From Octopus bimaculoides (Eukaryota): a stretch of 64,000 bases of DNA. The notes beneath the pieces were generated by a model. It had not been told where the DNA came from. It saw only the letters and a program-made list of their open reading frames with translations, and did no database searches. Each line of letters starts with the position of its first letter. The stretch's first letter is position 1. The DNA lies in contig NC_068988.1 in assembly GCF_001194135.2 (NCBI RefSeq), positions 5,415,306-5,479,305 of the forward strand. Reading direction: 5' to 3'. The translations under genes and the position numbers were made by a program. Below are positions 1,895-62,620 of this stretch, in pieces.

Positions 1895-3266
1895 TTAAGA
1901 TATCATCATCATCATCATCATAACAACCAATTTTCTTTGTTTGCATGAGTCAGATGAAATTTGTTGAAGCAGATTTTCTATGCCCAGATGACCTTCTTGT
2001 TGCCAATCATCACCCGTTTCCAGGTTAGATAATATTTCTCCGTATCATCCTAATACGTTCTTGCAGAATATTGAAAATGAATGATACTGCTTCTGTGGCA
2101 GTAATAAACATTTACAACTATCACCCGATGTCAAGGCAATGAGACACAAACACATATACATGCTCACACACACACTTATCTACTTCTATATCCATGAACT
2201 TTTAAAACTATTTTAACTATAAACTTATTACAGTAAATTCAATTTCCTTACACCTCCTTCTACTCTACTATCTTTTCTTATATTATTTAATCTTGTTTTG
2301 TTTTATTTTATTTCAACTTCCTCTTTTACCTTTCCTAACGTCTACTTATGGCATTATCCTGTTATCTTTATATATATATATATATTTACAATTAAAAGGG
2401 TAAAGGTTTATCAATTTATTAATTTATTAATAAATTAACAATTAATAATTTTTACCAAGCCCTTCGGTATGTAAACACCATTATAAGTATATATATATAT
2501 ATATAAATGTATGATGATATATATACATATAAATCATTGCTCCCCAACTATATGGTTCAAGGTTCAGCTCAACAATGTGGCACCTTGAGCGAGTAGTTTC
2601 TACTATAGCCACAGGCCCATCAAAGCTTTGTGAGTGGATTTTGTAGATGAAAACTGAAAGAAGCCAGTCATATATCATCATCATCATTTAGCATCCATTG
2701 TCCATGTTGGCATGGGTTGGACAGTTTGACCAAGGCTAGTAAGCTGAGGGGTTGCACATCTTTGAACAGGGCCTGGGGCTCAATTCAGACAGTTATTTGA
2801 AGCAGCTGGACGCTGTAGTCAAAGTCTGGATTGGAGAGGGTTGCTGTTGGACACGGACACACACACACACACAGAGTGAACCCTCGTTAAACCTTACTAA
2901 TAATAGAAAGGTTGTCCGTTTTAACCAGTTGTCTGAGTTCACTGACATCATCATCATCATTATCATTTAACATCCGTTTTCCATGCTGGCATGGGTTGGA
3001 CAGTTTGACAGGGGATGGCCAGCTGAAGTTCAGGCTCCCTGTCTCTTTTGGCAAGGTTTCTACAGCTGGATGCCCAGCAGAGTTAATATTTGAGGCATAA
3101 TGACAGTTTAATTTGATGTTGCAAATCATAATTATGTTAAGGATATAATTTAAAAGCAAAAAATTATTTCAAAGTTTTTTTTTTTTTTGTGGTGGTGGTC
3201 GGGGGGAGGGAGGGGCAGGGAATACAAAATAAAATATATGAAAAGACATTGTCAAGAGATTATTGC

Positions 3267-12353: not shown

Positions 12354-13647
12354 TAAGAGGGTGGGCTGTAAAGCTTATAGGCTGACCATGAAGGTGTGAT
12401 GCTAGAGCTGTGAAATCTTGCCTGCATTAATTTCAGCTCATCTTATGAATAACTGCATTGTTTCTTTCCAGGTAAACTGACATCTGATTGTTCAAAGAAG
12501 ACTTGAAAGTAACTAGTAGTGACTTCTCTTGAAAAACAACATTTGATATTGTGGTGCTATCAAGTACCTGCAGGAAAAAAGGTTTAGACCCCAAGGACAT
12601 TTATCGTGACATGGTTGTTAGATTAGGGAATGATGCTCCATCTTTAGCAACAGTACAAAAGTGGGTAGTTGAATTTAGGAGGGAAAAGGCAAGTCTTGAA
12701 ATAATCTATGGTCTGAACATCCTACAACTGCCACCACCAAGGAAAATATTGAGCATTTCACCACAAACTGATAGATGTCAGGCAACTGACTATAAATAAA
12801 ATAACCAATGCTATTAGCATATCCCGTGAGAGAGTTGAGAATATTCTGCCCAATGAACTTGATATGATGAAAGTTTCTACTTGGTGGGTGTCATGTCTTC
12901 TGACATTTTATCAAAAGTGGACCAAGCTGATCACACCACTGGAAAATCTGACATTGTTTGAGGCAGATGCAGCTGGTTTCCTTGAACGTTCCCTAAGCCA
13001 GGATAAATATTGGATTCACCACTTTGAACCAGAGGCAAAGAGATAATCCATGCAAAGGAGATACCCCCTCCTCATCTGCTCCAAAAAAGTCATCGTCATT
13101 TCATCTGCAGGGAAGGTGAGGGCCTCAGTTTTAGTGGATGCAAATGGCTTTGTGTTTATAGACTATCTTCAAAAGGCCCACACCATTAATGGAGAATACT
13201 ATGCCACCTTGCTGAGGCAGTTACAAAAGGCTATCAAGACCAAAGGTCCAGGAAAACTGACAAAATGGATCTTGTTTCATCAGGACAATGCTCCAGCACA
13301 CAAGTTCTTGGTTTCAATGGCTGCTGTGCATGACTGTGGCTTTGAACTGGTTGACCACCCTCCCTATTCTCTGATTTGGCCCCATCTGACTATCATATGT
13401 TCCCCCAAAATGAAAATACACTTAGCTGAGAACGTGTATCGCAGTGATGATGACATCATATCTGTTGTTGATGAGTTTTTTTACCAACAGGATAAAAGCT
13501 TCTTCACCGGTGGGATCCAAGCATTGCAACACCAATGGAAGAAGTGTGTGTACCACAAGGGGGACCATGTTGAAAAACAATCCTCATTTGGTTAAACTTC
13601 ATGAGTATTTAGGCCAGCCTATGAACTTTTTAGCTGACCCTCATGTA
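12354..13647 (+). mobile_element. Full-length but inactivated mariner element (about 1.3 kb)
   Basis: Approximate TIRs (TAAGAGGGTGGGCTGTAAAGCTTATAGGCTGACC / GGCCAGCCTATGAACTTTTTAGCTGACCCTCATGTA); HTH, QDKYWIHHFEPE, HQDNAPAH and HPPYS motifs split by frameshifts. Confidence 0.88.
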
Positions 13648-16330: not shown

Positions 16331-16760
16331 ACCTTATGTTCACTAACCAATCATTTTGGTTTATTTTTGAATTACAAAAATTTCTATAGATTCTCTTGTA
16401 GTGAAATATACTGATCTATTACCATATAATGATTTTAATATTGCAGTAATTTTTGTAATGTAATAGACCATTAATTAATTAGAAGGCAAAATTTATGTAA
16501 TTTTTAGAATTGTCCTAAATATTAGCAAAGACAGGTCTACTGATTTCAGTACCCAAGTGGTTAAAATAGCATATGAAAATGTATGCTGTATTTTCAAAAC
16601 AAAAGCTGGTAGAGCAAAACTAATCTCATATTTGGAATCAACAGCACAAATACACACCAAAATAGGTCTAACTTTCGAAAGTTTGATAGCATATGGCCAG
16701 TGTAATCAAGTTTCTTTCAACAAAGGTCTTTAACAAATATGTGAAAAATTATCAACAAAC

Positions 16761-16841
16761 CTGACTGGCTTCAGAGCCATTAGAACTAACTTCTTTAGTG
16801 AAGATTTTCATCTTTTCTTGATCCATATTCCACATAAGTAA
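16761..16841 (-). CDS. AMD1: AdoMetDC exon 8 (LLMWNMDQEKMKIFTKEVSSNGSEASQ); last exon found, gene continues beyond the window's left edge
   Basis: Preceded by branch site TTTTCCTTAAC and an AC acceptor; CAG|gtttgt donor; 81 nt. Aligns to [27 protein letters not shown]. Confidence 0.88.
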
Positions 16842-17630
16842 GTAAAAATGTTAAGGAAAAGTTGATAAGAAAAGTAATATTGAAATTTTTTTCCTGAATA
16901 AAGAAATGATGACATATTTTCTGAGAATTTTTTTCTTTTCATAACAAATACTAACTTGGTGTAGAGAACTGAATCAAAGACTCAACAACATTAACAGGTG
17001 AAAGAGAAGGAAAACATGTGATAGATGGAAAATGCTGAGATCTGATGATTGAATGTAGCCACAGCAAAAGTAAACTAAAAAGCTTAATGAGAGGTATGAT
17101 ATACTTGTAGAAAAGTCAAACAAAAGAGGCAAAGGGAGGAAGTTTGTGTACTACGACAACTGAATTCTGACATTTCAAGCTAGAATATACTTAGAGGTGG
17201 TTAGCAGCACAGCCAGGATGTATATTCATTAGGTATCTGCATCAAGTAGAAGTACAGTAATATTAATTATAAGATTTGGAATAAAAGATGCTTGATCATT
17301 TTGAACAAAAATATTGAATTGCTGAAGTTCAATATTTGGAGCAGAGTTTGCTCAGAATTGTTTGGCAGCTACATTTAGCATTGTTTATGTTATAATGTAA
17401 ATTGTATAAAATATTGTGGTTATTAGAACAATGTCTTCAAAAAAGTTTATCAGTGAAGTATGTAGGCGCAGGAGTGGCTGTGTGGTAAGTAGCTTGCTTA
17501 CCAACCACATGGTTCCAGGTTCAGTCCCACTGTGTGGCACCTTGGGCAAGTGTCTTCTACTATAGCCTCGGGCCGACCAAAACCTTGTGAGTGGATTTGG
17601 TAGACGGAAACTGAAAGAAGCCCGTCGTAC

Positions 17631-17667
<37 letters not shown>

Positions 17668-19363
17668 CATATATGTATGTGTATGTATGTGTGTCTGTGC
17701 TTGTCCCCCCACCATCGCTTGACAACCGATGCTGGTGTGTTTACGTCCCCGTAACTTAGCAGTTCGGCAAAAAGAGACCGATAGAATAAGTACTAGGCTT
17801 CCAAAGAATAAGTCCTGGGGTCGATTTTCTCGACTAGAGGCGGTGCTCCAGCATGGCCGCAGTCAAATGACTGAAACAAGTAAAAGAGTTCAGGTTAAGT
17901 TAGTAACATATACATTGTGGGTGAAGGTGGTTGTATCAGTATCTTACAAGTATTTCTATAATCTTATATACAAAATTTTAAAAATTGTCTTTTGTTTTTT
18001 TTTACATTGCCAACCTATTTTAAATAACAATAATATCACTGACTTTTTTTTTTTTTGCATTGAAATATCATCATCATCATTTAACATAAGTTATCCATGC
18101 TCGCATGAGTTGCACGGTGTGACCAGAGCTGGCAGGCTGCACCAGACTCCAGTCTGATGTAGCATAGTTTCTACAGCTGGATGCCCCTCCTAACATGCCA
18201 ACCACTTTACAGAGTATGCAGAGTGCTTTAACGTGGTACTGCAGGGATCTTTTACATGATGCCACACAGATGCTTTTACATGTCGCCATATGGAAGCTTT
18301 TACGTAGCATCACCACGAGTGCTTTACACCACCAGCAGGAATTGGTCTTAACATGTCTGCTGCAGAGTACAGGTCTTCTTGATTATAGCAAGGCACCAGG
18401 TATCTCAGTCTTTTGTCATCTCACCTGAAAGGTTCAGCTTCCTGAGGTCATCTTCAGTACTTCATCTCCTGTCTTCCTGGTCTCCCACTTCCATGTGTTC
18501 CACCCACTTTGGCAGATCAGCACGTTTTTATGGCGCTGTCGCTATCCATCCACATCACATGACCAAACTAATGCAGTCTTCCCTCTTGCACACAGCAACA
18601 AATTCCTCTTATGTCTCACTTCTCTCTCAGAGCACTGGCAATCTGCCAAAACCTGCACACTTACATTATACATCCAGTGAAGCAGACTAGGCCTCATTCC
18701 TTTGCATATCCTCTGCATTAATTCATTGGTTTTTGTGATGTTGATACTCAGACCAAACCAGCACTCCAATTTACAGTGAGGCTTTTCGTAACTGTATTGT
18801 TAAGACAACACTAACCTCTCCTTACTCTTTTAATTAAAACTAGTGGATTTATGGGGTTTTATGTGTTCTGCTTTTTGTAAAAGACTACATAGATTTTTAT
18901 TAACAATAATTTTAATTGTATGAAAGAATTTCTAATGTCTTCTGTATTTAGTTGTGATATATTTCAATATTTTGTGCTTAAAATAGGTATCTTATTTTAA
19001 GTCTGATGGTGTTTGCTGTGCATATTAGCAAGTAAAAGATAATATCAACATCCTGCTAAATGTTTCATTTGTTTATATTTCATAAGCTAGTAAAAAAAAC
19101 TAGTGGTGTCCAATATGTTTTACTCAAATTGAACGTTATTATTCAACCAGGATGCAAACTGCAGCATTTTATTTTTAAATCACTTTTTTGAAGATGCTAC
19201 AATGCCAAAAAAAAAAAAGTGAATATAAGCAAGGTAGAAATCAGTTAATTAACAGTTTACCATTTCAACAAGTGTATAAATAAAAAAAAAAAAACAATCA
19301 GTCAATTACCTACAACTTTCAAATAATATTTTTGATGATATTTGTCAATATAGTCAAGGATAT
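16842..19363 (-). other. AMD1: U12-type (minor spliceosome) AT-AC intron, AMD1 intron 7
   Basis: 5' ss ATATCCTTG (19363-19355), branch site TTTTCCTTAAC (16860-16850), terminal AC (16843-16842). Joining restores the frame and the conserved QTFE-LLM sequence. Confidence 0.9.
17462..17889 (+). mobile_element. tRNA-derived SINE, family B (internal TA/TG microsatellite)
   Basis: Head GTAGGCGCAGGAGTGGCTGTGTGGTAAG, GGTTCAGTCC B-box-like, GCACCTTGGGCAAGTG core; minus-strand copy at 62065-62480. Confidence 0.8.
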
Positions 19364-19418
19364 TTCAAATGTTTGATCAGGTTCTGAAATTTTTTCATCA
19401 TCCAATGTATAGAGATAC
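19364..19418 (-). CDS. AMD1: AdoMetDC exon 7 (YLYTLDDEKISEPDQTFE), ends at an AT-AC U12 donor
   Basis: ttttgtttag acceptor; YLYTL and PDQTxE motifs. Homology stops exactly at GAA|ATATCCTTG; 55 nt. Confidence 0.92.
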
Positions 19419-19855
19419 CTAAACAAAAACAAAAATTGAATGTAAAATTCAGAGAAACATTAATAACAAAGAAAATCTAATGAAGATTTCCAGCAAACAT
19501 TCCAAAGATAAAACAGGATAAAAAAAATATTAAAAAAAACAATAATAAAAGAAAAATATTCAGGACTGCAAATGCTACTTTTTTGAAGAATTAATTTGAT
19601 TATTCATGAATTAATAAAATTAACAACTGTGGTTGTAGCTTTTGAATCCAATTCCTCATACTGCAACAGTACAGGTCTCAAGAGGAGAGCCAACGATTCC
19701 ATCATTTTCAACTGCAGAAACAACCAAACAGCTTCATTCAATGAACTCAACCAAAGAGAAACTTAAGCAATTGCAATGACTGAACTTCTAAGGCACCACA
19801 TCCACCTTAAATTTGATTTGAAAAATTTTTTGTTTGTTTAGTACCAGAGCCAGAG

Positions 19856-21119: not shown

Positions 21120-21162
21120 CAACAATCTTTGTTTATTCTTCCTAAAGTGTAGGCAACACCAT
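21120..21162 (-). CDS. AMD1: AdoMetDC exon 6 (GVAYTLGRINKDC-W)
   Basis: tttgcattcag acceptor, TG|gtaagt donor, 43 nt; homologous to GAAYCMGRMNSDCW. Confidence 0.94.
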
Positions 21163-22946: not shown

Positions 22947-22974
22947 TACCAAATAATTCATCCAAATGACTGAC
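22947..22974 (-). CDS. AMD1: AdoMetDC exon 5, 28-nt microexon (VSHLDELFG-N)
   Basis: tttttctgttatag acceptor, GTA|gtaagt donor. The only candidate found that bridges phase 0 (exon 4) to phase 1 (exon 6); matches the human segment IEFLNAIFPN as recalled. Confidence 0.88.
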
Positions 22975-24182: not shown

Positions 24183-24257
24183 CTCATCTTCAAAGCGTTG
24201 ATGAATTTCATGTTGTTTTTCTGGCTGTCTAAATTTCTTTCGAGAATAAAATACATC
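24183..24257 (-). CDS. AMD1: AdoMetDC exon 4 (DVFYSRKKFRQPEKQHEIHQRFEDE)
   Basis: ttttttacag acceptor, GAG|gtaatt donor, 75 nt; FYSRKxF motif of AdoMetDC. Confidence 0.94.
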
Positions 24258-24741: not shown

Positions 24742-24868
24742 ATCAACAGAATCAATGTTACATTTGTCTTTAATTAGCTTCAACAATGGCTTCACAGCTA
24801 AGAGCAGTGTCGTAGTACCACAAGTTTTCAAAATAAAACGCCGTTTTGTAACAAACATGCTGCTTTCA
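24742..24868 (-). CDS. AMD1: AdoMetDC exon 3 ([42 protein letters not shown]), contains the autocleavage/pyruvoyl site E63-S64 and the catalytic Cys in KTCG
   Basis: tttttgcag acceptor, GAT|gtgagt donor, 127 nt. [19 protein letters not shown] is the AdoMetDC signature; overlaps supplied ORF 24628..24858. Confidence 0.97.
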
Positions 24869-28431: not shown

Positions 28432-28518
28432 CTTAAAACATAAGCATCCATATCTGCATCTTTCTCATAGCTAATTATTTCAACACGGACATTTTTAAGC
28501 AGTTCTGCCCATTCTTGT
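28432..28518 (-). CDS. AMD1: AdoMetDC exon 2 (QEWAELLKNVRVEIISYEKDADMDAYVL-S)
   Basis: ttcttcag acceptor, AG|gtaata donor, 87 nt. Phase is compatible with exons 1 and 3; AYVLS motif precedes the cleavage site. Confidence 0.95.
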
Positions 28519-37344: not shown

Positions 37345-37442
37345 CGAGAAATTGTTCTAAGATCCCGAGAATCACTCGAAGGTGAAAACCAGACTTCGAG
37401 TAATTTTTCAGTGCCTTCAAAAAAATGAGTTGCTGAAGCCAT
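37345..37442 (-). CDS. AMD1: S-adenosylmethionine decarboxylase proenzyme, coding exon 1 (MASATHFFEGTEKLLEVWFSPSSDSRDLRTIS-R)
   Basis: Hand translation gives the AdoMetDC N-terminal motif HFFEGTEKLLEVWF. ATG at 37442-37440 in aattATGG context; donor CG|gtaagt; 98 nt. Confidence 0.96.
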
Positions 37443-37543
37443 AATTAGTGGAATTAATGAGAAATGTGGCGAAGGAAAAGAGAGTACGTGTGGAGCATCG
37501 AGGAATTACACTTCTCTGCTGAATAAATTTCATTGATTTACAT
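37417..37543 (-). promoter_or_regulatory. Cluster of candidate upstream ORFs in the AMD1 leader: ATG-TAA (37543-37538), 38-codon uORF overlapping the main start (37533-37417), 14-codon uORF (37498-37454)
   Basis: Read directly from the minus strand. TSS and 5'UTR splicing are unknown, so presence in the mRNA is inferred. Confidence 0.55.
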
Positions 37544-37555
37544 GATTGTCGGTCG

Positions 37556-37562
37556 CTTCCGG
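37556..37562 (-). promoter_or_regulatory. ETS/GABP-like CCGGAAG motif about 115 nt upstream of the AMD1 ATG
   Basis: Motif seen in a locally CpG-containing stretch; a similar ACTTCCG lies at 52462-52468 before the MED28 ATG. Function not demonstrated. Confidence 0.3.
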
Positions 37563-38234
37563 AATATTTTCAAAAGAATACAAATCATTTATTTTTGTTC
37601 AATTATATTTTTATATTATAATTTCTGACAAAAGAGTTGTTGGCTATAAGTTTCCAGTGAGGCCAGTCGAGGGTTCGCTGCATTTTTGATGGCGAGCGAC
37701 AAGGGTGCATTTGTACAATTCGATATGGAACAAATATTTCAGAGAACTTTATTCGAGCAACACCGTTTTTTCCGTTTCTAGCCATAGTCAATATACTATG
37801 GGCTTCCACACAGTTTCCGTTTGCCAAATTCCAACCACATGGTATTGATAATCCGAGATTATGGTAGAATCACTTGTCAAAGGTGCCACACAGTAAGATC
37901 GAACTGCTTAACCATGCAAGCAGCACCAATAATAAATTAAATCAATATCGTCACAGAGTTGCCAACTTCTTTATAAGGAAATAATTTTTATCGATACAGA
38001 GAAGAGTAGCCAATTGAATCAGTTTAATTATATGTACTACCGATATTTATTTTCTCCATCACGTAAAATAATAGAAAATGTTAACCCTCCGTACTGTAAA
38101 TCCTAAACTTTATTAAAATATCTAATACAGCATTCTACTATATCAGTCGTCAAAGTTTGGTGAAAGTCTTTAGATTTTCAAGAAATGAAATCCTGTGATG
38201 TTCGTGTCTTTTTCAAGGTCATTAACAGTGAAGT

Positions 38235-43750: not shown

Positions 43751-46495
43751 GTATCCTTTCAAAATATTCCATGCAACAATTTGAATTTTGCATTACATCT
43801 CTTTTTTTAAAAGCTATGTATGTTAAATGATAAAAATGAACAATGGCAAAGATAGTTGTAAGGATTTAAATGCTCCATTACTGTCAATAGCTACATAATG
43901 AAGCTGCTAAATTAAGAGTTGAAACTCTAATATAGATTGGAAATTGCATTTTTAAGGCAAGGAGATTAATTTGCTTCAGTCAAATGATCGGTAATAGGAC
44001 AGAACAATATGCATATTATCAAACACCTCAGCTCCTACAATTTAAACACTCATTCATCCTGGATGTGAAACTGTTTTATGACAATAAAAAGAATTTTATT
44101 GTTTGGTTGATTATGGTTGTTCTGTTACTAAAAAAATTCAAACAAGTTTTTTTTTTTTTTGACAGTTATTGTATCCCAAGTCATGCAAATGTTTTGTGGT
44201 CTCAGTAAATAAAATGACAAATGTGTTACAGTAAAGAATGGGGAGGGAAGATGTACTGAAAGAGCTATTCTACTTCATGGGTAGAATGGCTCTTTCTTCC
44301 TTAATCTTATGGATAGCCATCTCTACCCCAATCAGATTGGTTAAGGAAGTGGTTTGGAGGCCCAAGACATTAGAATTTTCATTGTTGTAGCTTTGAAAAG
44401 AAACATATCAGTGGTCATTACTTTGTCATCTTGTGATCCTTGGGTCTGATGACAATTGCCCAGAATGGAAACTTGTGCCTTAGAAAAAGAAGACTGATAC
44501 CATCTGGTCTTTTGCCATCCTCTCATGTCTAACCCCACCAGCTCTAGTTATGATAGAAAATGGCAGCATCCAAATCTTATTTTTCTATCTTTGGAGGCAA
44601 TATGCTGAGTTAGCATGACAATGGGTGGAATATAAAAATATCCATTGTAGAGCTGCAACCTTAAGTGAAATGCTGATTTGGGGACAGTCATTATTCAACT
44701 GGTAATATTTGATCTGAAGGGTGTGCTGCTGGAAACTTGCCAGTTGACGTTGGTCGAGTGAATGCGTAAGGTTCATCATCATCATCATGATCGTGTCCAA
44801 GATATTGTAGCATTTAATGTCATCCCATTGATGTTCAACTGATGAACCATCTGCAAGATTACAGTTTTAGCTTTGTACAAGGTGGTACCAAAAGATTCCC
44901 AAACTAGTTCTGTAGTCATGGGCAGGAAGCTGGAACAAAGAGCCAACATGAAGTTTTGTGTCAAACCTGGGAAGTCTGCTACAGATACATCGAGCAAGCT
45001 TACAGCAACAAGGCACAGGCTCTTCAAAAGCTGAAGAACGTCCCTGGAAGATGATGAGCGATATGGATGACCTTTAGGAACTTTTGCTCCTAACAAAGAA
45101 AGCTGAAACATAGAAGGCAGACATTCTCCAAATACAAGAATAAAACAAATGTTAAGAATTTGCGAATAAGGCCGTAAGTCGTTTTAATCTTGGTACTGCA
45201 TGCAAATTACAGTATTTGTATAGAAAGAGATAAAGGTGTTTCTGTGTGTTCGTATTCATATACAAGAGGTGGTTATGTTTGACTGTTACGTCACTTGGAA
45301 TCGCTTTGGTTGCGCTGTCCAAAAGCTATAGATTTAATTCTCCCACAATGCAACACCACATGTGCCATTCAGCGGCCAATGGATGAGACAACTGGTTTTA
45401 AGGGAGGTAACTGTCTACAGACCTGCCACGAATGTTACCCCCAGAAATGTGGGGAAAATTCATCAGCTTGTGCATGAGGATCATCGGAGAACAACCAACA
45501 ACATTACTGGTGTTGTTGGTTTATTGTGCGGGTCCATGCAGGCAATGCTAACATCTGGATTCTTCACAACAACAATGTGCCCTGTCACCGAGCTCTCCAC
45601 ACTTGTGAGTTTTCTGCCCAAAACAACATGGTATTGCTTCCACATCCACTGTATTCGCCAGATTTAACACCTGTAAACGTCCATCTCTTCCCTAAGATGA
45701 AAATGCAGCTCAGAGGTTGCTGTTTTAACACCATTGTCCAGATCAAGAGCAAATCACAGAAGATCCTTGACTCTCTTCTGGAAAATTACTTCCAGGCTGG
45801 ATTCCAAAAGTGGCAAGAATGCTGGCACCGGTGCATTGCTGCACAAGGTGTCTATTTCGAAGGAGATGCTGTTAAAACTCAGGTAAATAAGTTAGTTTTT
45901 ATTAAACATAACTAGTCCAGGAACTCTTTGATACCACCATATACCAAATTATGGGAAAGTCTTCAGTGTTGTGAAGAACATCAGTGATCAGGGTATGAAG
46001 ATGATAAAAGGAATTGTGATTTCATTTCAAGTTGAACTGATTCATTTAAATACTGTTTAGTTGCAATGTAGTTTTTGATGAGCTATATCCATATTACAGG
46101 TCTCTGAAATTGATGTAGCTTATGGAACCTTTACAATCACCCCATAGGTTTTGATTGTGACATGAGATATTCTCTAGTTTTGTTTAGTGCTGTTGTTAGA
46201 TTTTGTGAAGTCAGGATTCTAATTTGTGGATATGTTGATTGATATTATCTGAAGAATCCTGGATGCTAGTAATATGTGATGTAAACAACTAACGAGGGAG
46301 CTTCTATGTAATAATTGAGCTGATTCTCCAGCCTAGTACTGAGATGTTTCTCAGGTAAAAAAAAAAATACTTCCCTTATTGGAGAGAGAGAATTTCCTTA
46401 TTAGGATACTATGATGCTTTTTTTTTTCAGTTTTAGAATAGGAAACAGAACATTTTTTCCTTTTAATATTTATTTTCCTTAACATGCAAACTTAG
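43751..46495 (+). other. TRAPPC1: U12-type GT-AG intron, TRAPPC1 intron 2
   Basis: 5' ss GTATCCTTTC; branch site TTTTCCTTAAC at 46473-46483, 12 nt before the intron end; no polypyrimidine tract between branch site and AG. Confidence 0.92.
44876..45943 (+). mobile_element. Degraded mariner element inside the TRAPPC1 U12 intron
   Basis: Approximate TIRs TACAAGGTGGTACCAAAAGATTCCCAAACTAGT / ACTAGTCCAGGAACTCTTTGATACCACCATATA; LEQRANMKFCVK, LEDDER and HPLYSPDL motifs. Confidence 0.82.
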
Positions 46496-53199: not shown

Positions 53200-54380
53200 A
53201 ATGGTCATGCTACACCTTTTCTACAGATGGGGCTGAGCCATCTACCTGAAGGGATTTGTGATTTGTCTGCTTTCTTTCTAAGACTTTGAATTTTTGCTAA
53301 GTTAACTGTAAGGCCCTTCAATTCTAGACCTTGTTTCCACACCTGAAACTTCTTCCCTAGCTCAGGTTGTGATTCAGCTATAAGAGCAAGGTCCTCAGCA
53401 TAGAGGAGCTCCCAGGAATAGCATGACTTAAATCCTTCTGTTATTGCCTGGAGGACTATTCGTTGGTGAATCCCTACTTGTACCCTGAATTCTTCACTAT
53501 ACTTATTGCCAACCCTTACCTTACTGACAGTGTTCCTGTACATAGCTTGTACAGCTCTCATCAACCACTTGTCTATCCCTAGTTTCTGCATTGACCACCA
53601 CAAGGGATCGAGTTACTATGTTAAAGGCTTCCTCTATGTCAACAAAAGCCAAGTACAGAGGTTTATCTTTGGCTAAATATTTCTCCTGCAGCTGTCTTAT
53701 CAGAAATATAGTATTGGTGGTGCTTCTCCCTGGCACAAAACCCAAACTCCATCTCATCTAAACTAACTCTCTCCCTAATTAGTTAGGCTATGACCCCTTT
53801 CTATGACTTTCATCGCCTGATGCAACAATTTGATATCTGTGTAATTATTTCTATCTAAGGCGTCACCATTATATTTATAGCAGTTGACTATGGTATGACT
53901 CCTTCATATAACACCTGGTTAACTATATGGGTGACTAGGCCATAGCCTACACTATCAGATATTTTAAGCGTCTCAGCAGTGATTCCTATTGGGCTGGGGG
54001 GCTTTCCCTGTCTTTGTATCCTTAAATAACATTGCAATCCTTTCTCACACACTGTCTTGCAATTGGAAACACTTCAAGTCTCTGGTCCTCATGGCGCAGA
54101 ACATTGGCAATCCTCTTCTTTTCTGCTTCCCCTCTGGCTAACTATACCTTTCTCCTAGCTTCCCTTTTGGCTACCACCACACTTCCAGTCCTGTTTCTCT
54201 TCTCTAATGGCCCTGTCAACTACATTGTTCCACCACCATGTCACCTTGGGTTGAGAAGGGACTTTGCACCAGCCACAGATCTGGTCAGTAGGCCTCAACA
54301 GGTTGTCCTCCATGTTATATGACGCTATATCCTCTTCTTTTTGTCAAAAGCTTCAAGTAACACATCTCTAAATCTCTGTC
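53200..54380 (-). mobile_element. RTE-clade LINE fragment (RT domain) in MED28 intron 1
   Basis: GFVPGRSTTNTIFLIRQLQEKYLAKDKPLYLAFVDIEEAFN, VQVGIHQ and LLYAEDL motifs. Confidence 0.85.
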
Positions 54381-54741
54381 CATCCAGAGGATAACCTCAG
54401 TTACACTCGGGTTAAATTTGAAAAATTTCTTGAAAAAAGAGGACCTACCACCTTACTATGTTTTGGACTCTCTCAAAGAGTGTATGGTTTGTGACATGTT
54501 CACATGGCACAAAAGAAAGAAGCATTCTTCACCACCACAGCTTCAAAGTTGGTGACAACAGGCTAACAAGTATAGATGTAAATGTGCTGTCATTTTGGGC
54601 TGTTTTATATCCTTGATGCGTACCAAGTTAGATTGTACTATCAGTTTTACCATTCAAAACTTTATTATTATGAATGAATTGGATCAAAATAGATTTGTAA
54701 CAGTGTTCTAAATATATATTGACATTGTATCCTTATTTCAG

Positions 54742-60869: not shown

Positions 60870-62620
60870 AACTTGAAGATTATCTCAAGAGAAATTAAAG
60901 ATTGCTATGGCTGAATTTCGTCACATGTTAGACCTTGGAATAATTCATCCTTCTAGCAGTAACTGGTCAACACCTTTAGTTTTGGTAAAAAAACAAAATC
61001 TCACAAACTGGCATCCATGTGGGGATTTTAGACAAGTTAATGCGAAGACACAAGCAGACAAATATTCAATCCCACACATTTATGATTTTGCAGCTCTGTT
61101 GGGTGGTTGTAATATCTTTTCTAAAATAGATTTAGTTGGAGCATACAATCAAATTCCTGTTGAAGAGAAGGATATACCAAAAACAGCAATCACACCTCCA
61201 TCTGGGTCATATGAATTCCTTCGTATGCCTTTCAGACTGAGGAATGCAGCAAATACTTTCCATAGGTTCATTGATGAAGTAACAAGAGATTTACCTTTTG
61301 TATTTGTTTATAGAGACGATGTTCTCAATGCTAGTCCGTCAGAAGTCATGAAAATCACTTAAAACAAATTTTCAAAAGACTGACTAAACATGGTAAAGTG
61401 ATAAATCAATCAAAGTGTGTTTTCGGTGAACGTTCTATATCTTTTTAAGGTCATCTCATTGATAAAGGTAGAATTCGCCCACTGCCAGACAAAGTTGAAA
61501 CTATTAATAAATTTCCAATACCGAATTCTTTAAGAAAGCTCCAGGAATATTTAGGACTCATTAATTGCTACCAATGCTTTATTCCACATTGCACAGAAAG
61601 AATATTTCCTTTGACTGAATTATTAAAGAATAGGAGAAAGAAAAATGAAGCTATAACTTCAAAAGATGAATTAAAGGCTTTTCCTGAAGCAAAATTATTG
61701 TTGGTAGTTGATGCTTCCGATGCTGGAATTGGTGGAGTTTTACAACAGTTTCATTGTGGTTCTAGGCAACCATTATCCTTCTTTTCAGAAAATTCAAGGT
61801 ACCAGAAATGAAATACAGCGTTTTCGGCAGAGAATTGTTGGCAGCTTACTTGTCAATTAAACACTACAAACATCTTCTTGAAGGTAGGTCATTTACATAA
61901 TTTACTGACCATAAACCATTGACACATACACTAAAAAATTCTTCTGGAAAATATTCTCCGAGATAAATTAGACACCTTGATTATATTTCACAGTATACTG
62001 TGGATATACGGTGTATCAAGGGTGTTGAAAATTCTGCAGCTGATGCACTTTCTTGAATGAATACTCTTTTACTTGTTTCAGTCATTTGACTGTGGCCATG
62101 CTGGAGCACCGCCTTTAGTCGAGCAAATCGACCCCAGGACTTATTCTTTGTAAGCCTAGTACTTATTCTATCGGTCTCTTTTGCTGAACCGCTAAGTTAC
62201 GGGGATGTAAACACTCCAGCATTGGTTGTCAAGTGATGGTGGGGGGACAAACACAAACACACACATATATATACATATATACGACGGGCTTCTTTCAGTT
62301 TCCGTCTACCAAATTCACTCTCAAGGCTTTGGTCTACCCGAGGCTATAATAGAAGACACTTGCCCAAGGTGCCACGCAGTGGGAATGAACCCGGACCCAT
62401 GTGGTTGGTAAGAGAACTACTTACTACACAGCCACTCCTGCACCTATAGCTACTTACCACACAGCCACTCCTGTGCCTATATGTAGATTCATTGAATGTT
62501 AATGCATTAAGTTCGTTAAGCACTATCAATTTAGAAGAAATGTTTAAAGATCAAACTACTGATAAAAAATTTTCTTTATATAAAGATTCCAGTTCTACTT
62601 CTTTGAAATTTAAATTGTAG
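60870..62620 (+). mobile_element. Ty3/Gypsy pol remnant (RT + RNase H), interrupted by a SINE
   Basis: MLDLGIIHPSSSNWSTPLVLVKK, FSKIDLVGAYNQI, MPFRLRNA, YRDD (degenerate YxDD), VDASDAGIGGVLQQ, RELLA and TDHKPL; frameshifts and stops. Confidence 0.88.
62065..62480 (-). mobile_element. tRNA-derived SINE, family B, with a tandemly duplicated head
   Basis: Reverse complement of 17462-17889; head segment repeated near 62418-62480. Confidence 0.8.

What the first reader, a model, noticed from the sequence alone, without database searches (positions are those of the whole stretch)
16842..19363. Rare AT-AC minor-spliceosome intron in the polyamine gatekeeper gene AMD1
Seen: homology to AdoMetDC stops at PDQTFE|ATATCCTTG and resumes at LLMW after TTTTCCTTAAC-atttttAC. 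Only this join keeps the frame; read-through hits TGA at 19321-19319. Established: ATATCCTT, the TTCCTTAAC branch site and the AC end define U12 AT-AC introns, a rare class often spliced slowly. From memory, human AMD1 has one uninterrupted exon across this position. Inference: AdoMetDC output in this lineage depends on the minor spliceosome, and GT-AG-only annotation pipelines would mis-model this gene.
Basis: partly seen in the sequence, partly recalled or inferred. Interest (0 to 1): 0.8.

Follow-up and report, generated by a model that had tools for sequence, protein, structure and literature searches.

The report
Ancient U12 AT-AC intron in octopus AMD1
The octopus gene for the polyamine enzyme S-adenosylmethionine decarboxylase really does contain a rare AT-AC "minor spliceosome" intron, but it is an ordinary, already-annotated one inherited from the earliest animals and lost in vertebrates.

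Summary
Confirmed, but ordinary. On the minus strand, 19363-16842 is a 2,522-nt phase-0 intron with ATATCCTTG at its 5' end, TTCCTTAAC with its branch A 10 nt from the 3' end, and a terminal AC. RNA-seq from four runs joins 19364 to 16841 exactly; no alternative GT-AG junction was seen. The gene is an Octopus AMD1 orthologue. The window holds CDS exons 1-8, and the other six introns bounded within it are GT-AG.

The intron is not a lineage novelty. An AT-AC intron with an invariant ATATCCTT start sits at the same codon boundary (PDQT[FL]E|[LIV][LI]M) and phase in O. sinensis, abalone, starfish, a tick and a sea anemone. It is absent from a marsupial, a shark and a beetle. So it predates the cnidarian-bilaterian split and was lost in jawed vertebrates.

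Public NCBI models already use the junction. Two deposited bivalve models are truncated by reading through ATATCCTTT (…E-I-S-F…), which supports the mis-annotation point.

There is no evidence of slow splicing: 0 of 27 exon-7 reads cross the 5' splice site, and unspliced contig depth is about 2% of spliced.

It is a new, not individually described member of a well-known class. Interest is low to moderate.

The parts
16842..19363 (-). U12-type AT-AC intron (intron 7 of the CDS), 2,522 nt, phase 0, between codons E171 and L172
   Evidence: Sequence; RNA joint 16841|19364 in 4 runs; same junction in the O. sinensis annotated model
19355..19363 (-). 5' splice site ATATCCTTG (U11/U6atac pairing element); ATATCCTT is invariant in all six orthologous introns
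16850..16858 (-). Branch-point sequence TTCCTTAAC, a perfect match to the U12 consensus; candidate branch A at 16851 (-10) or 16852 (-11)
16842..16843 (-). 3' terminal AC of the intron
19319..19321 (-). In-frame TGA reached if the intron is read through (adds ISLTILTNIIKNII then stop)
   Evidence: translation
19364..19418 (-). CDS exon 7 (…W)YLYTLDDEKISEPDQTFE
   Evidence: read depth sharply bounded at 19364 and 19418
16761..16841 (-). CDS exon 8 LLMWNMDQEKMKIFTKEVSSNGSEASQ. The next intron (GT...) runs off the window start; the mRNA continues RCGIDKLLPN, which is not in the window
   Evidence: (loose end at 16761)
21120..21162 (-). CDS exon 6, flanked by GT-AG introns
22947..22974 (-). CDS exon 5, a 28-nt micro-exon (VSHLDELFG+1), flanked by GT-AG introns
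24183..24257 (-). CDS exon 4
24742..24868 (-). CDS exon 3, with the SESSMF proenzyme self-cleavage motif
28432..28518 (-). CDS exon 2
   Evidence: (loose ends)
37345..37442 (-). CDS part of exon 1 (start codon at 37442). The 5' leader extends at least to 37700 in an RNA contig
17466..17886 (.). Interspersed repeat inside the intron with an (AT)n/(CA)n tract. It is a species-specific insertion absent from the O. sinensis intron, and its very high RNA-seq depth comes from other copies

Best explanation
Window 19363-16842 (minus strand) is a genuine U12-dependent (minor-spliceosome) intron of the AT-AC subtype in an Octopus AMD1 (S-adenosylmethionine decarboxylase proenzyme) gene. Shown: the boundaries, the motifs, precise excision in RNA, and conservation of position, phase and AT-AC termini in five other species. 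Inferred from established U12 biology: U11 snRNP pairs with the 5' ATATCCTT, and U12 snRNA pairs with TTCCTTAAC, bulging a branch A 10-11 nt from the 3' end. U4atac/U6atac.U5 then joins, U6atac replaces U11, and two transesterifications join GAA (E171) to TTA (L172). If the intron is not removed, translation stops after 14 extra codons, which would lose the C-terminal ~155 residues of the enzyme. A functional enzyme therefore requires minor-spliceosome activity. The intron is ancestral: it was present before the cnidarian-bilaterian split, is kept in molluscs, an echinoderm, a tick and a sea anemone, and was deleted precisely in jawed vertebrates and in a beetle. At steady state it is removed efficiently.
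For: Sequence motifs at the exact homology break. RNA-seq joint 16841|19364 in X21 (7 reads), X22 (6), X23 (1) and an X1 contig of depth 621, with no competing joint. The RNA-verified model of exons 1-8 has all six other bounded introns GT-AG. The exact spliced mapping of the O. sinensis protein P0001 needs an AT-AC phase-0 intron at the same site (ATATCCTTAACT...TTTTCCTTAACATTTTTAC). The same holds in Haliotis, Asterias and Ornithodoros and in Actinia. ATATCCTT is invariant in 6 of 6; the branch-point sequence is clear in molluscs and the anemone. There is no intron at this site in Sminthopsis, Mustelus or Aquatica. Bivalve models read through as E-I-S-F, i.e. ATATCCTTT. A branch-point-to-3'ss distance of 10-12 nt fits the short distance (optimum 11-13 nt) reported for U12 introns (PMC3584512). 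Molluscs are relatively rich in minor introns, and O. sinensis was in the pan-eukaryotic survey (PMC10639083).
Against: Dependence on U11/U12/U4atac/U6atac was not, and cannot be, tested here. No intronIC score was computed. The branch-point match is weak in the tick and only moderate in the starfish. The region upstream of the branch point is T-rich, so absence of a polypyrimidine tract cannot be claimed. Human AMD1 itself was not examined.
Confidence: 0.93

Rival explanations
1. The intron is an AT-AC intron removed by the major (U2-type) spliceosome.
For: U2-type AT-AC introns exist (established knowledge).
Against: U2-type AT-AC introns lack the ATATCCTT 5' element and the TCCTTAAC branch site close to the 3' end. 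Here both are perfect and ATATCCTT is invariant across six species from three bilaterian phyla and Cnidaria.
Confidence: 0.03
2. The AT-AC join is an artefact (template switching, mis-assembly, or a deletion allele) and the real mRNA uses other GT-AG boundaries.
For: None found. The junction read counts are modest (14 raw reads).
Against: The joint has no shared letters on its two sides ('both' = 0), is seen in four independent runs, and is the only joint touching exons 7 and 8. It restores the conserved protein PDQTFE-LLMW. The same junction type is needed in five other species.
Confidence: 0.01
3. Beyond being a constitutive U12 intron, it acts as a regulated, rate-limiting (detained-intron) checkpoint that couples polyamine synthesis to minor-spliceosome activity.
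For: Its retention as the AT-AC subtype since before the cnidarian-bilaterian split, without conversion to U2-type or GT-AG, is compatible with constraint. In X1 an unspliced contig across the 5'ss has depth 11.9, whereas the intronic contigs listed for the other introns have depth about 2. U12 introns can be rate-limiting (Patel et al. 2002, cited in PMC3584512).
Against: 0 of 27 reads over exon 7 cross the 5' splice site in three RNA-seq runs. Unspliced depth is about 2% of spliced in X1, and contig depth is a poor measure. Vertebrates and a beetle lost the intron cleanly, so it is dispensable. Larue & Roy argue that neutral processes explain much of minor-intron evolution (PMC10639083).
Confidence: 0.1

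Closest known systems
U12-type (minor-spliceosome) introns, AT-AC subtype, e.g. the archetypal human NOP2/P120 intron F and the AT-AC introns of voltage-gated sodium/calcium channel genes (examples from my own knowledge)
   Same: A 5' /ATATCCTT element, a TCCTTAAC branch site about 10-12 nt from the 3' end, a terminal AC, a single such intron among GT-AG introns in the gene, and deep conservation of position and subtype across animal phyla.
   Different: The host gene: AMD1 is not a minor-intron gene in the jawed vertebrates examined here (a marsupial and a shark), so it is not among the usual human-centred examples. No paper in the searchable library links AMD1/SAMDC with U12 or AT-AC.
Annotated AMD1 orthologue of Octopus sinensis (P0001, 'S-adenosylmethionine decarboxylase proenzyme 1 isoform X1', GCA_006345805.1)
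   Same: The same 12-exon CDS architecture, with the AT-AC intron between E171 and L172 and identical TTTTCCTTAACATTTTTAC 3' end.
   Different: The intron is 4,593 nt there against 2,522 nt here, because of independent repeat insertions. Nucleotide identity is about 88-91%, so the window is from a different Octopus species.
Vertebrate AMD1 gene structure (8 CDS introns)
   Same: It shares seven of the octopus intron positions and phases, e.g. after RTIP/S-R, before SESSMF and before WYLYTL.
   Different: It lacks the U12 intron, the intron that precedes the 28-nt micro-exon, and the intron after ETN…Q. It therefore has no minor-spliceosome dependence.

Membership tests
U12-type intron (AT-AC subtype) | 5' splice site matching /ATATCCTT | tested here: met
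   ATATCCTTG at 19363-19355. The element is invariant in six orthologous introns.
U12-type intron (AT-AC subtype) | Branch-point sequence TCCTTAAC (TCCTTRAY) a short distance from the 3' splice site (optimum 11-13 nt per PMC3584512) | tested here: met
   TTCCTTAAC at 16858-16850, with its A residues at -10 and -11.
U12-type intron (AT-AC subtype) | 3' terminal AC and excision exactly at AT...AC in RNA | tested here: met
   Joint 16841|19364 in four RNA runs.
U12-type intron (AT-AC subtype) | No distinct polypyrimidine tract upstream of the 3' splice site | tested here: inconclusive
   Only ATTTTT lies between the branch site and AC, but the region upstream of the branch site is T-rich in this AT-rich genome.
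U12-type intron (AT-AC subtype) | Splicing depends on U11, U12, U4atac and U6atac snRNPs | not testable with these tools
   This needs knock-down or in vitro splicing. No snRNA gene was found in the window (Rfam scan).
U12-type intron (AT-AC subtype) | Quantitative classifier score (intronIC or a U12 position-weight matrix) | not tested
Only consensus matching was done.
AMD1 / eukaryotic S-adenosylmethionine decarboxylase proenzyme (Pfam PF01536) | Sequence homology along the protein, including the ES|SM self-processing site | tested here: met
   The 198-aa window product matches the O. sinensis AMD1 protein P0001 closely (exon HSPs about 80-97% identical), and the homologues carry PF01536. 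YVLSESSMFV spans exons 2 and 3. The last four CDS exons lie outside the window.

The most novel reading that the evidence does not exclude
The AMD1 AT-AC intron has been kept as a minor intron since before the cnidarian-bilaterian split because its removal is a regulated, rate-limiting step. Under this reading it ties polyamine synthesis to minor-spliceosome activity in most invertebrates, a control layer that vertebrates replaced. That would make AMD1 a tractable reporter for minor-spliceosome regulation outside vertebrates.
Probability: 0.08. Interest if true: 0.55.

Novelty: new member of a known kind. Interest (0 to 1): 0.25.

Why it matters
It adds AMD1, a key polyamine-pathway enzyme, to the set of genes that need the minor spliceosome in molluscs, echinoderms, chelicerates and cnidarians, though not in vertebrates. 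It is a clean example of an ancestral AT-AC intron lost precisely in jawed vertebrates and in a beetle. It also gives a practical warning: at least two deposited bivalve gene models are truncated at this intron. It does not change how minor splicing or polyamine control is understood, and the junction is already encoded in public NCBI gene models.

Tried and rejected
- **Genomic look-ups that failed.** Xenopus (P0059) returned only transcript contigs. Rhinolophus (P0071), Acropora (P0092) and Montipora (P0093) were not on record. I used Sminthopsis, Mustelus and Actinia instead.
- **Mapper fixes.** My first HSP-anchored junction finder failed at short exons and at HSP ends that ran into introns. 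I replaced it with an exact depth-first spliced mapper. That mapper failed on Actinia because of assembly gaps (N runs), so I used junction-by-junction mapping there.
- **Literature.** Searches for AMD1 or adenosylmethionine decarboxylase with U12, AT-AC, minor intron or minor spliceosome found nothing relevant. The one polyamine hit used 'U12' as a protein-spot label. The held supplement of Larue & Roy has no gene list. Lin 2010 and the insect U12 paper do not mention the gene.
- **Window scans.** Rfam and tRNA scans found nothing, so the intronic repeat could not be classed as a tRNA-derived SINE.
- **Motif counts.** Motif frequency alone does not show significance.
- **Rejected alternatives.** A 25-nt version of the micro-exon is contradicted by the RNA joint 21162|22947. 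An AT-AC alternative for intron 3 is contradicted by the joint at 24257|24742.

Full report
**Observation**

I read the window on the minus strand. It shows ...CCT GAT CAA ACA TTT GAA|ATATCCTTGACT..., so the exon ends at 19364 and the intron begins at 19363. About 2.5 kb downstream it shows ...CAACTTTTCCTTAACATTTTTAC|TTA CTT ATG TGG AAT ATG..., so the intron ends at 16842 and the exon resumes at 16841.

A tblastn with human AdoMetDC (sequence written from memory, used only as a probe) placed AMD1 exons on the minus strand. The alignment breaks exactly at PDQTFE. The later O. sinensis query picks it up again at LLMW.

**RNA evidence**

I found public RNA-seq runs of the same organism (coded 'organism A') and laid them on 16500-19700. 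One joint involves the two exons: from 16841 to 19364, skipping 2,522 nt. Its ends are GT..AT on the + strand, which is AT..AC on the gene strand.

- It is carried by 7, 6 and 1 reads in three raw-read runs and by a contig of depth 621 in a fourth.
- No letters are shared between its two sides.

A fine-scale lay over exon 7 shows 27 reads bounded sharply at 19364 and 19418, and none runs into the intron. In the contig run, an unspliced contig across the 5' splice site has depth 11.9 against 621 for the spliced form, about 2%. At steady state the intron is therefore removed efficiently. With 0 of 27 reads, my own estimate of the upper 95% bound on retention in these samples is roughly 10%.

**Gene and organism**

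The best database match of the joined exons is the S-adenosylmethionine decarboxylase proenzyme 1 of Octopus sinensis (P0001, 326 aa). The window differs from it at several residues and is about 88-91% identical in intron DNA. It therefore comes from another Octopus species.

Combining homology with RNA joints gives the model below, on the minus strand.

| CDS exon | Window coordinates | Note |
|---|---|---|
| 1 | 37442-37345 | CDS part; start codon at 37442 |
| 2 | 28518-28432 | |
| 3 | 24868-24742 | |
| 4 | 24257-24183 | |
| 5 | 22974-22947 | 28-nt micro-exon |
| 6 | 21162-21120 | |
| 7 | 19418-19364 | followed by the AT-AC intron |
| 8 | 16841-16761 | |

All six other introns bounded within the window are GT-AG. 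The intron after exon 8 begins with GT and runs off the window start. It is 16,542 nt in O. sinensis. The RNA contig continues with RCGIDKLLPN, which is not in the window.

**Is it U12-type?**

The 5' element ATATCCTT matches the U12 consensus. TTCCTTAAC is a perfect 9-of-9 match to the branch-site consensus. Its adenosines lie 10 and 11 nt from the 3' end, close to the 11-13 nt optimum given in the review PMC3584512.

Each motif alone is expected by chance once to a few times in a 64-kb AT-rich window. The argument rests on the coincidence of both motifs with the homology break, with the RNA joint and with evolutionary conservation. Dependence on the minor snRNPs cannot be tested with these tools and remains an inference from established U12 biology.

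**Evolution**

I wrote an exact spliced mapper that threads an annotated protein through its genomic locus (junction-wise for the gapped Actinia locus).

| Species | Group | Intron at PDQT[FL]E\|[LIV][LI]M | 5' end | 3' end | Length (nt) |
|---|---|---|---|---|---|
| Octopus sp. (window) | cephalopod | AT-AC, phase 0 | ATATCCTTGACT | TTTTCCTTAACATTTTTAC | 2,522 |
| Octopus sinensis | cephalopod | AT-AC, phase 0 | ATATCCTTAACT | TTTTCCTTAACATTTTTAC | 4,593 |
| Haliotis cracherodii | gastropod | AT-AC, phase 0 | ATATCCTTTAAG | TACCTTAACCACATCCAC | 906 |
| Asterias amurensis | starfish | AT-AC, phase 0 | ATATCCTTTGAA | CCCTTGACCTTGTATTTGCAC | 671 |
| Ornithodoros turicata | tick | AT-AC, phase 0 | ATATCCTTTTGT | branch site weak | 443 |
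| Actinia tenebrosa | sea anemone | AT-AC, phase 0 | ATATCCTTACTT | ATCCTTAATAATTGATCAC | 1,133 |
| Sminthopsis crassicaudata | marsupial | none; exon uninterrupted | - | - | - |
| Mustelus asterias | shark | none; exon uninterrupted | - | - | - |
| Aquatica leii | beetle | none; exon uninterrupted | - | - | - |

ATATCCTT is invariant in all six introns, and every other mapped CDS intron in these genes has GT-AG or GC-AG ends. The intron was therefore present before the cnidarian-bilaterian split and was lost by exact deletion in jawed vertebrates and in at least one holometabolous insect.

Human itself was not examined. The octopus is not special here: it keeps the ancestral state.

**Annotation**

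The NCBI-held models of O. sinensis, Haliotis, Asterias, Ornithodoros and Actinia all require the AT-AC junction, so the feature is already encoded in public gene models. O. sinensis was one of the species in the pan-eukaryotic minor-intron survey, which also notes that molluscs are relatively rich in minor introns (PMC10639083).

Two deposited bivalve models are truncated: Mactra antiquata P0028 and Potamilus streckersoni P0038, both 189 aa. They end ...PDQT[VI]E-I-S-F... followed by a few residues and a stop. I-S-F is what ATATCCTTT would encode, so they appear to be read-through truncations at this very intron.

**Literature**

Full-text searches linking AMD1 or adenosylmethionine decarboxylase with U12, AT-AC, minor intron or minor spliceosome returned nothing relevant. 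Two evolutionary U12 papers do not mention the gene. The instance therefore seems not to have been described individually, which is understandable because human AMD1 is not a minor-intron gene.

**Mechanism and rivals**

The best explanation (confidence 0.93) is a constitutive U12-dependent AT-AC intron whose removal is needed to make full-length enzyme.

- A U2-type AT-AC intron is very unlikely given both U12 elements and their conservation.
- An artefact is excluded by independent runs and by the orthologues.
- A regulatory, rate-limiting role is possible but unsupported. Retention is undetectable in the raw-read runs. The only hint is an unspliced contig of depth 11.9 against about 2 for the intronic contigs listed for neighbouring introns, and contig depth is a poor measure. 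Clean loss in vertebrates and a beetle shows the intron is dispensable.

**Verdict**

Its points of modest interest are its age, its loss in vertebrates, and the mis-annotated bivalve models. From my own memory, the intron falls right after the codon equivalent to human Glu178, in the PDQTLE segment that holds putrescine-site residues Asp174 and Glu178. I attach no mechanistic meaning to that.

Noticed in passing
P0028 (Mactra antiquata) and P0038 (Potamilus streckersoni): Both deposited 189-aa bivalve AMD1 models end ...PDQT[VI]E-ISF... plus a few residues. I-S-F is what ATATCCTTT would encode, so they appear to be truncated by reading through the U12 5' splice site. P0028 and a Bulinus model (P0148) are also mis-named 'AMP deaminase'.
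   Followed up: partly
window 22947-22974 (-): A 28-nt micro-exon (VSHLDELFG+1 nt) is confirmed by RNA joints. The same micro-exon exists in O. sinensis, Haliotis and the tick. In starfish, shark and marsupial it is fused to the upstream exon.
   Followed up: partly
window 17466-17886: An interspersed repeat with (AT)n/(CA)n tracts lies inside the U12 intron and is absent from the orthologous O. sinensis intron. Its RNA-seq depth is in the thousands, with many variant letters and chimeric joints, which indicates many expressed copies elsewhere. ARAGORN and Rfam give no tRNA or known-RNA match. O. sinensis has its own ~2.5-kb insertion in the same intron.
   Followed up: partly
window 37443-37700 (-), 5' leader of AMD1: Several upstream ATGs and uORFs lie in the transcribed leader. 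A 16-codon uORF, MICILL[K/E]IFRKRPTI[M/L]*, is shared with O. sinensis at about -145. A second, MKFIQQRSV..., overlaps the main start in the window but is short in O. sinensis. This may be relevant because AMD1 is uORF-controlled in vertebrates and plants (my own knowledge).
   Followed up: partly
window 18347-19393 (-): A 1,150-nt RNA contig in run X1 (depth 11.9) runs from exon 7 across the 5' splice site about 1 kb into the intron, so it is unspliced precursor at about 2% of the spliced depth. The intronic contigs listed for the other AMD1 introns have depth about 2.
   Followed up: partly
window 13050-13595 (+), 53205-53603 (-), 60907-61362 (+): These ORF remnants look like transposable-element proteins: a mariner-type transposase C-terminus inside AMD1 intron 8, a reverse-transcriptase fragment, and an LTR-retrotransposon-like RT. 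They were judged by eye from the translations only.
   Followed up: no
window 3139-3146 (-), 54607-54614 (+), 61168-61175 (-), 46476-46491 (+): Other exact ATATCCTT matches and one TCCTTAAC-N-AC match occur at about the number expected by chance. None is tied to an exon boundary that I could see.
   Followed up: no
window 37701-64000: No gene was identified upstream of AMD1 exon 1 in the remaining ~26 kb, apart from TE-like ORFs. There are no Rfam families or tRNAs anywhere in the window.
   Followed up: no
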